From: Parasitella parasitica NRRL 2501
Lineage: Eukaryota; Fungi; Mucoromycota
Assembly: GCA_025201805.1 (NCBI GenBank)
Contig: MU619346.1
Location: 47,365 to 102,745 of the forward strand
Reading direction: 5' to 3'
DNA length: 55,381 nucleotides
The notes under the pieces are model-generated. The model ran no database searches. It saw only the letters and a list, made by a program, of their open reading frames with translations, and was not told the origin of the DNA. Below, one piece after another: positions 8,172 to 15,565 of this stretch (position 1 is the first letter of the stretch; the number at the start of each line of letters is the position of its first letter). A program made the translations under genes and the position numbers.

Positions 8172-11100
8172 TTAGTTAAAAAACTTGTCCAAACTCTCAC
8201 CTAAATGAGTTTCGATTTGAGCATTGACCTGTTGGACCAACTTTTCAACACGAATATCATCGTCTTCCATAAGCTCAGCAAGGAACGAGATGCTCTCAGC
8301 CAAAAAGAGCAGCCACTCTTCACCGAGACGAATGTAAAATTCTTCAATACACTTCAGTGCTGCTAATCTGATCTCAGGATCATCTTCTCTCGTCTTTAAC
8401 AATACCTTGTGGTTAAGAGGCTTCCAAAGGGTGTCATTAGAAACTGTAACAGCCATTTGGCCAACACAAGGCACAAGATATGTGTTCATGCGAGCAAGGT
8501 AATCAGAGCAAGTGCCCTTGCTGGTAACTAGCATTTGATCAGTGACAGGATCAACTATCTTCTCAAACTTGGTAGCATTCCAAAGATTGTCATTGTCATA
8601 CAAGAACGACTTGCGGAGAGCTGACATGATGTAATTCCAAAGAGCATCAACGGGCTGCTGTTCATCCTTGTAGCGTTCCAATCTCATTATAACATCGTCG
8701 ATCAGATAGCCAAAGTAGGGAGTAAAGATAGACTTGAGTTTATCCAAAAGCGCATCGGCAAGCTTGTAAAAGAACAAGACACGCTTCAAACCATCCTCAG
8801 AGACAACAGCACCATCAGAAGCCAGTTCAACAGTGGCCCAGTCAACCACCTTGAGGAACAAGGGCTTGAACAAAGTCTCATTCAGCTTCATGACTAAATC
8901 AAGGAAAGCGCCGATAATGGCCCCTTCAATCTCATTTACTTGCGATTCATCAAAGCTCTTGCTGTGGGCGCGACGAATGTCAAACGCAATCAGGAAGAAC
9001 TTGAAAAGTTGCTTGTACTGTGTGGTCATCGTATCACGAGTCATGTTGCGGATAGCTTGAGAGACGACAGACAAAAGACCCAATGTAGATTTGGTGCCAT
9101 TTTGAACAGCAACTTCGTAAAAGGCGAATACGGGCGTGAACAGCACACGAGGAGCTACACTGGTAGCCAGCTGGGACAAGACAGCAGTGGATTTGGCTTC
9201 AACCAGAGCCTTCTGGGAATGAGCAGCGTCATAGGTATAAATGGAGGGGTTCAAGAGGCCCTTCAGCATCTTTGTAATATAGGGACTGACAAAATGAGGC
9301 AAGGCACCAACAATAGTATCAAGAGCACTGACAACACCCAACTGTAAAAGCAGGTTGGGCGTTTCAGCATTTACTGTATCGTCTAAAATATCAGTAACAA
9401 GGGGCATAAACTTGGGAAGATGGGGCACAGCACGAGGGCCAATTTCTTGACAGATAACGGTTAGACAAACCAAGCTTGAAATCTGTAGTTGGGCATTGCT
9501 TGATTGAAGGCTCTGTGCGCCAATAATGACAGGGATGGCTTCAGCAAATTGCCCAGGATAAAGACTGCCGAGAATCTTGGCAAGAGAAGCAATACAGAGC
9601 AGCGCAGATTGCCTGTTGACAGCTTGGTCTTCTTCGCTGGATAAAACGGCAGATTCTGTTTGAATGACCTGCGTCAACTTATTTATCATCTTGACCAGGG
9701 TATCCTCAGAGCCTTCAGGAGCATGACCATTGAATGAAACAATCTTGTCGTTGAAGATGTTGAGTGCCTTGCGACGAATTGCAGTGTCATCGTGATGGAT
9801 CAATTCAGAGATAACATTAATGAAAGCATCCAGCGGCAAAAGAGCGTTGACCTTGTCCAACACATCGTACACCACCTTCAAGATGGCTCTCCAGAATTTA
9901 GCAATGCCAGGCACAGCATCCTTGGACACAGAGTAGGCATCACGGAATTTCGTAAAGTACGCAACAATCTTGAGTATGATTTCAACTGCTTGGAGATAGA
10001 ATGGCTGCATTCTTTGAGTAAACGCTTCAGAGGCATTGCTTTGAGTCATGACCTTGTTCAAGAAACCCTTGGAACTCAATAGTTGACCGGCAAAGTTAAG
10101 TGTAGCGAGCTTGTACTGACGAAGTTGCTTGGCATTGTGCTCGGATACATTAAACAAGTGTGCGTCCTTTTCATTCATCGAGACATCCTCTGGTTTTTCG
10201 TTGGGCAATACCAACAAACCATTCAGCAGAGCCAAGATGGCCTTCATTTGAGTTTCAGGGCCAAACTGTTGGCTGATAATCAGGCTGAATTCTGTCAACG
10301 ACTCGGCTTCAGAATGAGCGCCCTTGGCTAATCTCTCTGTAAATTTCTCCAACAACAACGAAATGATGGCATACAAGAATTCATCTTCGCCCAGAGTATA
10401 GATGAGCACGGTAAAGAGACGCAAACGTCTATGTTTGGGGATGTGGAAGAGAGCATCAACGAATACCTTGATGATGGGCTTTACTTCAAGCACGAGAGCT
10501 GCCTCGTCATTGTTATTAGATCTTCGGCTGGAAACCACTAGCGGAGGCAAGATCTTTTCAAGCGTTTGCTGAATGACTTGGAAGCTGTAATTGTCATCTT
10601 GACGAAGTACATTAGCACCCATAAAGGTAAAGACAGGCATGATGTTGTGCAGGACGGTCTCGGGGAACATGGAGGCAATAGTGGCCATTAATAACAGAGC
10701 CTGGTTGTGCGTTTGTGGGTTGCCAGTGATGCGAATACATTGCACCACAATGTCAACGCGGAGAGCAGATTCTTCAACAACTGCACCCTTCTCTTCAGCA
10801 TTATGGATGATACGAGTCAAGGCAGACATCAGCAGCTGGTTAATGTACTCAAGAGAAACAGGGGAATCCCGAAGATCAGCATTGACCATAGCTGTCAATA
10901 CTTCAAACAAGGGCTTTACAAGGATGTTGTCCTTGGTGATGGCCTTAGATTCAATCAGCTCGAGGACCGTAACGAGCTCATAGAGATCAACATCCGTGCT
11001 GTGTTGAACTGGGACATTAGTGCGGCCTCGTTTAGCAGCAGGTGCACCATTAGTAGTAGCAGGAGCTCCCATTAAATTTCTAGCGGTAGACAGCAAAACG

Positions 11101-14100
11101 GAATCAAACATCTTGGCGTCAATGTCAATCTTTGAAAGTACCATCTTGGAAGCGCGAACGTCGTTTTGGACGCCATTGGTGGCAATATCGATCAACGAGG
11201 TGAAAATAGCTTGTTGAGCACCAGTATTGGCCTGAGCAAAGAATTCAGGGGTAATCTGCTCAAGTGCAAAGTGACGGGTAGAGACTTGCCAGCCGTCTTC
11301 ATCGGATCCTTGAAGAACGTCCTTGTTGGCAAGCAAACGAAGGAATAGCTGCAGCGTTTTATCGCCCTTGCTACCTAGATTAGCAGCATTGCAAGGCAAG
11401 TAGGCGCGAATCAGATAGGAGACCAAAGCAGTGGATTTCTTGGTACGCTTTTCGTTCAATGTTTTTTCCAAGAGAGGAGCCAACAGTTGGAGCTTGAGAG
11501 GACTATCGACGGAATCCAGCATGGCGAGCATGCTAATCTTGAGTTCGAGAGTAGGGGCATCGTTGGCGTGGTTGAGCAGGAAGGTGAGGGTGTGGGCTTT
11601 GCGAGTCTTGTGCTGCTTCTCCTTTGATTGCTCGCACAAATCAAGGTATTCCTTGAACAAACGAGTAATGTAGCTACGGTCCTTGCTGATTTCATCGTGT
11701 CGGTACCATAAAAAGTCAACGAAATGAGCAGCCTCGTTGGACTTTAAGGGTGTGACGGAAGCAGCCTCGTCGTAGAATGAGCTATCAGGGAGAACGGTCA
11801 AGCTGGTAGCCACTTTGACTTTTTTAACTGCCTCAGTGAGGATCGTAGTGTCGTACACCTTATGACCACTAGGCAACCCTTGGCTCAAATAAATGGAACG
11901 GATGTTTTGTAAGCAAACAAGGCCCTGGACACGAACCGACTGGTGCAGGTTGCCTAAAGTAGGAAACAGAGCAGGCACCAAATGCTGGAAATCCACCTTG
12001 GTGTTATTAGATTCAATGTAATGACCGAGATAAGCCGAGGTGATCTGTAATGCGCGAGCACGGACAACAAAAGTATTATCACTGTTGGACCAAATGCTGG
12101 TAATAAAACGAAGTAGGTCATTGTCGAGTTGAGCTTTAATAAGCTGAGGAATAACCTTTTCGAACGCAACAACAGAGGAGCCACTGACAAAAGTCTTGAA
12201 GAGCTTACTAACCAGTTGAATATAACCGGTGTTGCTAGTGTTGGTTCTGTACCAATCGATAGAACCATCTGGGCGATGGACAGAGTTGGTCAAGGTAACC
12301 AGAACGAATTGAGCCAGTTGGACATAGGTTGTGGTAGGAACATCTTCTACATTTCTTAGCTGTTTGATAATATCGTTTGAGGGCAGACCAGAGGAGCCCT
12401 CCAGAAAACCACCTTTCATCTCAGTCGAATAAAATACGTCTAACTTGTCGTCTACGGCTGCCAAAACAGCGTTTAATGTGTTTAGACCTAGGGCGTATTG
12501 CTCCTTTTCCTTGGTAGTGAGAGAGACAGCCAAAGAGATAACCAGCATGCCAAGAATACTTTCGCCTCTAGATTTGCTTTTGACCATTTCCATCCAGAAT
12601 AAAGCACACTCTGGCTTTTTGTTCTGCTTGATCTGATCGGCCTGCAGTTTGATAAACTTGGTAGGCACCTGGAACTTGTCTTCGGCCTTTGCAGCGGCTT
12701 GAAGATGGTCAACCATAGAGGCCAAAACAGGGCTTGATTTCAAGTGAACATGACCCATACGCTTCAGCAAATTCGTGAGGTTATTGCTAGAAGCAGAGAA
12801 GATGAAGACTGACAAGATTCGAGCGACTTGGAAATCTTGTCCGGGATGCTTCTTGATGAAATCAGATAGCAAAAACTTGAGGACAGAGACAGCGTCCTTG
12901 GAATTGAACGCACCACGTTCTTCCAAAAGACGCACCAGCAAGGTCAAAATTTTTTCAGCAGAAACGTAGTTCAGTAGCTGATTGGGGACCTCTTCTACGG
13001 CATACGTAAACAACGCATTAAACTTGTCTAGACAGGCAGCCAAAGAAGACTCAAAGATCTCTGGAGTTTGGGTCAAAGGGTTGGATTTATCACCGACGAT
13101 GGAAATTAGTTTTTTCATTGCCAAAAGTCGGTTGTTGACAGCAGGGCTGTTCAGGCAGAGATAGAGGGTAGTGTTGGCCTCTTCAACTACTTCGTGCAGA
13201 GTTCCCTTAAAGGCAGAAGAGGTGAACTCATAAAGCTCCTTGCTAACATCAGCGTTGTTTTGGGAGACTGCCAATTGCGCCTCCAAAACAACATCCAACT
13301 CTTCCACATAACGTTGAGAAATCATTGCCAAAAGAGATTGGTATTGCGAAACAAATTCCTTCTTCTTATCGCTATCCTTGCCTTTGGCGAGAACGACATA
13401 GCCATCCACGATAAGCTGACAAAGACGGGATACATTCTCGCTTGACAGGTAGCCTTGCAATACTAAATTCTCCAGCAAATTTATGCAGCTCACTTGACGG
13501 CTAATGTCCTTCAAGAAGCAAGCGAAAAATCTGTCAGTAGCGTATTTGTCAGTGATCTGCAGAATGCATTGCTCAAAGTGAGAGTTGTTGATCATGTTTG
13601 AAAGTGCATTTTTGGAAACAGATTCGAAGCTTTCTTGTGTCTGGCAGAGATGGACAACGGTCAACAAGCAGTAAGTATAGCAGGACTTTTTGTAGTGTCT
13701 CAACATAGCATCGACAAGCGCCTCTACACCCTCTTTGCTGAAAGTTGCTTTGGAGGATAGCTGAGAAACGATCATGTAGCTGGCCAACTGTAATTCAGGC
13801 AATTTCTTGGCCTTAAAGCCGTCGATTAGATGAGGCACAAGAGCAATGGTCATATCAGCTGTAACAGAAGGTGCAAACTTGACAAAATCTGTCATCAGAG
13901 CGGCATAGAAAGAGTAGAGAGTCTGAAAAGGAACAAGAGACTGAGTCACCATTTTGCAGATGAAATCAAACACATATCTATTCTTCATCATCCTCTTGAC
14001 CAAAAGAGATCTTTCAAGAGGGAGCAAACTCTTTTTGACGGGCTTTAAGAATTCCCAAGGCGATTTTTCGCTAGATTTCAGAATATCAATACAATCGGGT

Positions 14101-14652
14101 TATACAAAAAGGGTGGGTCAATGTGTTCTTACCCAATGCTCAGGATGGAGACCATCTTTACAAATGATTTTGTCTCGTGATACGGCAAAATGCATTTGAG
14201 AATAGCTTCTACATTAAAGTCTTGGATACGGAAACGACGAATGAGATATTCCAATACTTTGCCTGAGGGTTTCAGTAGGAAATAAGGGGAAAGCTGTGAG
14301 AGAAAAGCGTTGATGCTAGCATCCAATTTGTCATTTTCATCTTTGGTCTAGAGAAAATGCAGTGAGTATTGCTATCATTTCAAAGAAGGGGTCGAGTGTG
14401 TACCTGAAGAACTCTATCGATGGATTTCATGCCCTCCGAGAATAGAGTCTTTTCAAATGCTGAGAACTTTTCGTCGAGAATCACAAGCTCCATGATGCCG
14501 TTGTAAGCAATGGAATAGATAGTTTCTAGATCTTGATCTGCTGCCTCACGAGCACTAAACAAGAAGGATGCCTTTGATTTTCTGGATAGTTCGCTCACAT
14601 TACGCAAGTCGAGTGTACCGATCTTTTTCAACTGCTGCTTCAACGAAGACAT
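8172..14652 (-). CDS. UTP10: U3 snoRNA-associated protein 10 (HEATR1/BAP28)
   Basis: N-terminus MSSLKQQL..KASFLFSAREAADQD, LEYLIRRFRI, ILPYHET; C-terminal BP28CT-type LVMKLNETLFKPLF and FLAELMEDDD. Two introns at about 14348-14403 and 14072-14132. Confidence 0.96.
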
Positions 14653-14801
14653 CTTTGCTAATTGAATGTCAAAATATGGTAAATCAAACAATTGACATTT
14701 CAAATAGCATAACTGCAATTAAAATCATAAAAAAAAAAAAAAAAAAAATACAGAAGGAAAGGCAGTCTGGAAAGCCACCTAAAAATCAATTTAGCAGTAG
14801 T

Positions 14802-14911: not shown

Positions 14912-15565
14912 ATGGGTCGTATGTATACTTCTGGTAAGGGTATCTCTGGTAGTGCCCTCCCCTACCGTCGCTCTCCTGCTTCTTGGGTCAAGACTACCCC
15001 CGAAGAAGTCGTTGAGCAAATCTGCAAGAATGCCAAGAAGGGTCTCTCTCCCGCTCAAATTGGTGTTCTTCTCCGTGACTCCAACGGTATCCCTCAAGTC
15101 AAGTCCATCACTGGTAGCAAGATTCTCCGTATTCTTAAGGCTAACGGTCTTGCACCTGAGGTCCCTGAGGATTTGTACCATCTTATCAAGAAGGCTGTCA
15201 CCATCCGTAAGCATTTGGAACGTAACAGAAAGGACAAGGACTCCAAGTACCGTTTGATTCTTGTCGAGTCTCGTATCCACCGTCTTGCTCGCTACTACAA
15301 GACCGCTGGTCAACTCCCTCCTACCTGGAAATAGTATCCTTTTTTGTTTATATTGTATTACTAACCTTGGGTGTGTGGGTGTGGGTGTGCGTTGGGAATT
15401 GGGAATTGGGAAATCATACTTTACTGCCTATATTGGACATTATGTCTAGAGTCAACGACCCATTTACTTTCGAGTGAATGGGCGAGCTCGATAACTGTCT
15501 GCCTTAACCCTCCTTTGTTTTTTTCTAATAGTGAGTCTACCACTGCTTCTACTATGGTTGCCTAA
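14912..15565 (+). CDS. RPS13: 40S ribosomal protein S13 (uS15)
   Basis: [18 protein letters not shown]...[24 protein letters not shown]. Exon 1 14912-15333 and exon 2 15532-15565 give ...[13 protein letters not shown], 151 aa. Confidence 0.98.
15334..15531 (+). other. U12-type (minor spliceosome) GT-AG intron in RPS13
   Basis: The 5' splice site GTATCCTTT matches the U12 consensus RTATCCTT; branch site GCCTTAAC (15501-15508) lies about 23 nt before the AG at 15530-15531. Splicing restores the conserved C-terminus. Confidence 0.88.

What the first reader, a model, noticed from the sequence alone, without database searches (positions are those of the whole stretch)
15431..15493. Structured RNA element inside the RPS13 U12 intron: candidate uS15 autoregulatory switch
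Seen: a 10-bp hairpin CCCATTTACT-TTCG-AGTGAATGGG (15459-15482), extendable through an asymmetric loop with opposed GA dinucleotides to GAGT/GCTC, beside a small hairpin GGACA-TTA-TGTCT and a weak closing stem TATT/GATA. Together these could form a three-way junction just upstream of the U12 branch site. Established: uS15 binds a three-helix rRNA junction, bacterial S15 represses its own mRNA through an rRNA mimic, and human RPS13 inhibits splicing of its own pre-mRNA. Inference: free uS15 binds here and blocks or redirects minor-intron splicing, giving feedback control wired through the minor spliceosome. This is my best candidate for an undescribed system in the window.
Basis: partly seen in the sequence, partly recalled or inferred. 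Interest (0 to 1): 0.8.

Follow-up and report, generated by a model that had tools for sequence, protein, structure and literature searches.

The report
Ancient conserved stem in RPS13 intron
The last intron of a ribosomal-protein gene in this mould holds an RNA stem kept across three fungal phyla and shaped like the piece of ribosomal RNA that the protein binds, so it probably lets the protein slow the splicing of its own message, but binding has not been shown.

Summary
All 26 orthologous introns fetched from Mucorales, Umbelopsis and Mortierellaceae carry it, as do Basidiobolus and Sorochytrium, with at least three independent two-sided compensatory changes. It persists where the splice sites are no longer U12-type. 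In this genome it occurs only at RPS13 and a broken RPS13 copy. Its geometry matches SSU rRNA helix 22, the uS15 site, so uS15 feedback on splicing is the best explanation (about 0.6). Binding and regulation are inferred; no RNA reads were available. No Rfam family or searched paper describes it; known RPS13 intron structures come from budding yeasts and human intron 1. No earlier finding of this element on other DNA came up in the scan's notes.

The parts
14912..15333 (+). RPS13 (uS15) coding exon 1, codons 1-140 plus two bases of Tyr141
   Evidence: ORF 14912-15334; Pfam PF08069/PF00312 relatives at 75-92% identity; identical over 140 aa to a protein named for Parasitella parasitica
15334..15531 (+). 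Last intron, 198 nt, U12-type GT-AG; if retained, TA|G forms a stop codon at the junction (140-aa product)
   Evidence: same intron reported in Rhizopus and Phycomyces (PMC2846911); U11, U12, U6atac genes in the genome
15334..15341 (+). U12 5' splice site GTATCCTT
15428..15433 (+). CTATAT hexamer just 5' of the stem; kept in most Mucorales and one Mortierellaceae copy; role unknown
15435..15443 (+). 5' strand of the 9-bp lower helix (pairs with 15491-15500)
   Evidence: covariation
15444..15448 (+). 5' side of the asymmetric loop: G15444 opposite G15490, then 4 unpaired nt (1-4 in orthologues, mostly ending in A)
15449..15452 (+). 5' strand of upper helix GAGT
15453..15485 (+).
15486..15500 (+). 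3' strand: GCTC (upper helix), G15490, ATAA, bulged C15495, TGTCT
15502..15508 (+). U12 branch site CCTTAAC, complementary to GUAAGG of this genome's U12 snRNA; begins 2 nt after the stem here and at the same spacing in most U12-type orthologues
15532..15565 (+). RPS13 coding exon 2 (last 11 residues, strongly conserved) and stop

Best explanation
A cis-acting feedback element. The stem 15435-15500 copies the geometry of SSU rRNA helix 22, the uS15 site: 9-bp lower helix with one 3' bulge, an asymmetric loop with a G opposite G about one helical turn from the base, then an upper helix, capped by any stable hairpin. Inferred steps: surplus free uS15 binds and locks the stem, which abuts the branch site; this hinders U12 (or U2) snRNP/SF3b loading; the last intron is retained; the transcript carries a stop at codon 141 and is held and degraded or yields a protein lacking the 11 conserved C-terminal residues. 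Shown: structure, conservation, RPS13 specificity, position, junction stop codon. Inferred: ligand, direction of effect, fate of the retained RNA.
For: Present in all 26 intron-bearing Mucorales/Umbelopsis/Mortierellaceae loci fetched, plus Basidiobolus and Sorochytrium. 97.8% of cells paired, covariation 0.150 vs 0.086 in shuffles (0/500), slid controls 23-36%. At least 3 two-sided changes by parsimony in the helices; 27/27 canonical at lineage level, 17/100000 shuffles. Models built from other loci hit only RPS13 and its broken copy in 32.8 Mb; descriptor gives 27 hits, all in RPS13 last introns, in 1.15 Mb. Helix 22 in Rfam's structure lines is 3+6 (E. coli) or 4+5 (18S) pairs around one 3' bulge, then a 2x1 loop; the helix-22 5' strand ranks 2nd of about 1790 positions of an 18S under a matrix of the element's 5' strand and shares GGACAGU with the basal-lineage elements. 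The Thermus S15 mRNA site has a G-G mismatch in place of the GU/GC motif on a long stem (PMC4684408). Human S13 inhibits splicing of its own intron 1 (PMC2095825).
Against: No binding or splicing data. No three-way junction at the stem base, the primary bacterial S15 site; the GU/GC motif is not reproduced. The covariance model does not find helix 22 in 18S or 16S; the loose topology descriptor fits 127 and 66 hypothetical pairings in 18S and 16S; the matrix match is post hoc, one base out of register and absent in 16S. This organism's own 18S helix 22 was not in the assembly. The element is 50-90 nt from the 3' splice site and not adjacent to the apparent branch site in most Mortierellaceae copies. 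In this species the conserved stem is only marginally favoured or disfavoured without a ligand.
Confidence: 0.6

Rival explanations
1. A ligand-free splicing helper: the stem presents the branch site, shortens the intron, or hides the AG at 15448-15449 from use as a cryptic 3' splice site.
For: Nearly fixed spacing to the U12 branch site; intron stems that shield cryptic sites are common in yeast (PMC12350175); in this species the first AG after the upstream ACTAAC lies in the element.
Against: Such a role needs pairing, not fixed letters; here GAC/GUC, GAG/CUC, a bulge and a G.G loop are kept across phyla and across a change of spliceosome type; no other intron in the genome has it.
Confidence: 0.14
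2. A site for another protein: a different ribosomal protein or assembly factor (cross-regulation), or a double-strand nuclease that cuts the unspliced RNA.
For: Sequence-specific conservation implies a ligand but does not name it; Rnt1-cleaved ribosomal-protein introns exist in yeast (cited in PMC4937481).
Against: The element is confined to RPS13 and resembles the uS15 site; the cap loop is not conserved, unlike Rnt1 substrates (own knowledge).
Confidence: 0.16
3. The reader's three-way junction, or a two-state switch between the small hairpin and the long stem, is the functional form.
For: Small hairpin and long stem are iso-energetic here and the small hairpin dominates the whole-intron ensemble (0.73); its inner GAC/GUC pairs remain possible in about half of the cores, mostly Mucorineae.
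Against: Closing stem probability at most 0.001; column 142 covaries with the long-stem partner, not with the closing-stem partner; the small hairpin is broken in Phycomyces, Umbelopsis, Lichtheimia, Basidiobolus, Sorochytrium and most Mortierellaceae, with no compensatory change.
Confidence: 0.06
4. An intron-encoded small RNA (snoRNA-like), as vertebrate RPS13 introns host U14 (own knowledge).
For: Conserved structured island in a ribosomal-protein intron.
Against: No Rfam match in the window or in orthologues at E up to 10 beyond chance hits; no conserved C, D or ACA box; the element abuts the branch site and its cap varies from 14 to 202 nt.
Confidence: 0.04

Closest known systems
Human RPS13 intron 1 feedback site (PMC2095825)
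   Same: Same protein family, intronic structure, proposed rRNA-like helix, inhibition of splicing
   Different: Different intron (first vs last), near the 5' splice site with protection at both splice sites; binding shown in vitro; no deep covariation reported in the passages read
RPS13 intron structures of Saccharomycetaceae (PMC4937481) and Debaryomycetaceae/Metschnikowiaceae (PMC8216456)
   Same: Covarying structure in a fungal RPS13 intron, proposed autoregulatory
   Different: Confined to budding-yeast families, which have only U2 introns; homology to this element could not be tested (no model or sequence to hand); no helix-22 comparison in the passages read
Bacterial rpsO (S15) mRNA leaders, especially Thermus thermophilus (PMC4684408)
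   Same: Partial mimicry of the h20-h21-h22 site; long stem with a G-G mismatch about one turn from its base
   Different: They repress translation from the 5' leader and use a junction or pseudoknot as second site; this element is intronic and shows no conserved junction
Yeast splicing-feedback elements of RPL30, RPS14B, RPL22B, RPS9, RPS22B, RPL7B (PMC7732827, PMC12311795)
   Same: Ribosomal protein controls splicing of its own intron through an RNA structure
   Different: 5'-proximal U2 introns; here a terminal, ancestrally or mostly U12-type intron, with the structure at the branch site and a stop codon made by retention
U12 intron of Mucorales RPS13 (PMC2846911) and Xenopus L1 U12 intron mentioned there
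   Same: The very intron, with a general suggestion of regulatory meaning
   Different: No structure or mechanism was described for it

Membership tests
Ribosomal-protein autoregulatory intron element | Conserved, covarying structure in an intron of the protein's own gene | tested here: met
Ribosomal-protein autoregulatory intron element | Specific to that gene rather than a general intron feature or repeat | tested here: met
   (only the best 150 candidates scored in the genome searches)
Ribosomal-protein autoregulatory intron element | Direct, specific binding by the encoded protein | not testable with these tools
   needs gel shift or cross-linking
Ribosomal-protein autoregulatory intron element | Splicing falls when the protein is in excess; retained or unproductive isoform exists | not testable with these tools
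S15/uS15 rRNA-mimic site | Three-way junction with GGC base triple | tested here: not met
   no conserved junction at the stem base
S15/uS15 rRNA-mimic site | Helix-22-like stem: about one turn of helix with a 3' bulge, then asymmetric loop | tested here: met
   9 bp, one 3' bulge, G(n)A/G loop vs Rfam structure lines; loose descriptor, also fits many hypothetical rRNA pairings
S15/uS15 rRNA-mimic site | GU/GC motif, or the G-G substitute seen in Thermus mRNA, one turn from the base | tested here: inconclusive
   GU/GC absent; G.G in 11 of 16 cores, U.G 3, G-C 1, A-U 1 (PMC4684408)
S15/uS15 rRNA-mimic site | Profile-level similarity to rRNA helix 22 | tested here: not met
   model R2 does not hit helix 22 in 18S or 16S
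Kink-turn | Tandem G.A pairs next to a 3-nt bulge, conserved | tested here: not met
   an extra C separates the GA from the helix; GA pair absent in distant orthologues
C/D or H/ACA snoRNA | Conserved boxes and Rfam match | tested here: not met
U12-type intron | GTATCCTT 5' site, CCTTAAC branch near the 3' site, minor snRNA genes in the genome | tested here: met
   (U12 49.1 bits, just under the 53 cut-off)
Budding-yeast RPS13 intron structures | Homology to the published alignments | not testable with these tools
   no sequences in the supplement held; no Rfam model matched

The most novel reading that the evidence does not exclude
An ancient eukaryotic helix-22 mimic through which uS15 throttles a minor-class intron at its branch site, in place since before Blastocladiomycota and Mucoromycota split, and kept working when the intron's signals became U2-type: a ribosomal-protein feedback loop acting on either spliceosome.
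Probability: 0.45. Interest if true: 0.72.

Novelty: new variant of a known kind. Interest (0 to 1): 0.58.

Why it matters
It gives a compact, covariation-supported candidate for the RNA that eukaryotic uS15 recognises outside the ribosome, where the human site is only loosely mapped. It offers a concrete reason why a highly expressed gene keeps a slow U12 intron in fungi that have few of them, a point raised but not resolved in PMC2846911. It is directly testable in Mucor with a 66-nt RNA, and natural U12-type and U2-type versions allow a comparison of how one structure controls two spliceosomes. The kind of mechanism (ribosomal-protein feedback on splicing) is well known, which caps the surprise.

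Tried and rejected
Three-way junction, kink-turn and snoRNA readings were tested and rejected. Resemblance to 18S helix 23 (shared GUCAGAG) was rejected because the bulge lies on the opposite strand. Gigaspora (U12 intron), Coemansia and Obelidium (U2 introns at the same position) show only partial 5'-strand resemblance and fail both descriptor and model: not counted. The covariance models miss Sorochytrium and score long Mortierellaceae versions weakly (E 0.69 or worse) because of the long cap; their membership rests on orthologous position, descriptor (1 or 0 of 20000 shuffles) and single-sequence folding. Metagenome junction scan gave one locus; viral scans gave nothing. So there is no RNA evidence. 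The large representative-protein search was not used. One paper search failed on a typing slip and was resent.

Full report
Setting. The finding lies in the only intron of RPS13 (uS15): exon 1 at 14912-15333, intron 15334-15531, exon 2 at 15532-15565. The exon-1 product is identical to a protein named for Parasitella parasitica, Mucoraceae. The intron has a U12 5' site, a CCTTAAC branch site at 15502-15508, and the genome holds U11, U12 and U6atac genes. This intron was already reported in Rhizopus and Phycomyces (PMC2846911). Retention makes TAG at the junction and removes 11 conserved residues.

Observation. That range cuts the element. With 15494-15500 included, 15435-15439 pairs with 15496-15500. 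The long stem and the small hairpin have equal energy, and the closing stem needed for a three-way junction has probability at most 0.001. In the whole-intron ensemble the small hairpin leads, 0.73 to 0.25, so thermodynamics alone does not decide.

Comparative evidence decides. The motifs pair as a 9-bp lower helix with one bulged base on the 3' strand, a G opposite G with 1-4 extra 5' bases, and a 4-bp upper helix. On 19 aligned sequences 97.8% of cells pair, covariation is 0.150 against 0.086 in shuffles (0 of 500), and slid controls pair 23-36%. Because relatives share changes, I counted on a taxonomy tree: at least three two-sided changes in the helices (U-A to G.U/G-C once, A-U to G-C twice), one more at the G.G position, and two pair-breaking changes in intact genes; at lineage level 27 of 27 cells pair, reached by 17 of 100000 shuffles. 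The window itself has U-A where others have U.G or C-G. The sample is modest and the descriptor fixes some letters, so invariant columns are not independent evidence; the covarying ones are. The 10-bp hairpin is conserved only in a close relative.

Specificity. Models built from other loci find two places in 32.8 Mb: this element (75.7 and 70.9 bits) and a decaying copy in a broken RPS13 paralogue. A descriptor finds 27 hits in 1.15 Mb, all in RPS13 last introns. Rfam has no match. Gigaspora, Coemansia and Obelidium have the intron but at most a partial look-alike.

Link to the minor spliceosome. In U12-type orthologues the branch site starts 2 nt after the stem in most, up to 6 in Absidia-type copies. 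The element is intact in Sorochytrium, whose intron has U2-type signals, and in Mortierellaceae, whose 5' sites are no longer GTATCCTT; there it lies further from the apparent branch site. So the element does not depend on U12 splicing.

Mechanism. Sequence-specific conservation of a bulged stem with a free cap points to a protein ligand (inference). Rfam's structure lines give helix 22 as 3+6 (E. coli) or 4+5 (18S) pairs around one 3' bulge, then a 2x1 loop, G-A over G in E. coli: the same layout. The 5' strand of the basal-lineage elements shares seven letters with the 18S helix-22 5' strand, which ranks second of about 1790 positions under a matrix of the element. S15 binds a junction and a second site one turn up helix 22, and in Thermus mRNA that site is a G-G mismatch (PMC4684408). 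Against: no junction, no GU/GC motif, no model hit on rRNA, a post hoc comparison one base out of register, and a loose descriptor that fits many hypothetical rRNA pairings. With the precedent of human S13 (PMC2095825), I put uS15 feedback by occlusion of the branch region at 0.6; another ligand 0.16; ligand-free splicing aid 0.14; junction or switch 0.06; small RNA 0.04.

Known relatives. Covarying RPS13 intron structures are described for two budding-yeast groups (PMC4937481, PMC8216456); homology to them could not be tested. Eight counted paper searches found no description of this element, within a library that lacks most subscription journals.

Limits. Nothing here was taken for human sequence.

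Verdict. Real, old, RPS13-specific structured element; new variant of a known kind; function inferred. Interest 0.58.

Noticed in passing
window 15360-15365; L005-L009 intron positions 18-45; L018: U2-type branch motif ACTAAC 18-27 nt after the U12 5' site; in the Choanephora-group loci it is followed by pyrimidines and an AG, like a U2 3' splice site inside the U12 intron.
   Followed up: partly
window 15428-15433; L019-L028: CTATAT sits 5' of the stem in most lineages but beside the apparent branch site in most Mortierellaceae copies; every copy with it ends in ATAG, allowing a weak 4-5 bp pairing over the 3' splice site.
   Followed up: partly
L002:1203-1406 (-), G000 contig C22: Broken RPS13 paralogue (stops and frameshift) that still holds the U12 intron and a decaying element with two weakened pairs.
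   Followed up: yes
L019-L028 intron starts: Mortierellaceae RPS13 introns begin GTACCATG or GTATCAAC, neither a U12 nor a typical U2 site; L025 keeps a U12-like branch motif right after the stem. Looks like U12-to-U2 conversion in progress.
   Followed up: no
L013, L015, L016, L029-L032: Several genomes hold RPS13 paralogues that lack this intron beside copies that have it, so only some copies would be regulated.
   Followed up: no
L043-L045:1223-1502: Coemansia intron at the same position has three branch-like CTAAC motifs each followed by an AG, suggesting alternative 3' splice sites, plus two small hairpins near the 5' end.
   Followed up: no
window 15368-15412: [quoted passage not shown]
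   Followed up: no
window 8172-14718 (-): RPS13 is head-to-head with a large HEAT-repeat gene; the same neighbour in L005 and L007 carries U3snoRNP10/BP28CT domains (UTP10-like), a small-subunit assembly factor.
   Followed up: no
database proteins P0007-P0219: 55 of 221 fetched RPS13 entries are 137 or 140 aa ending at WK/WR, consistent with gene callers stopping at the junction TAG of this intron across early-diverging fungi.
   Followed up: partly
L041 (G000 contig C60:34650-34933): The only SSU rRNA match found in the assembly is an isolated fragment (model positions 1194-1485).
   Followed up: no
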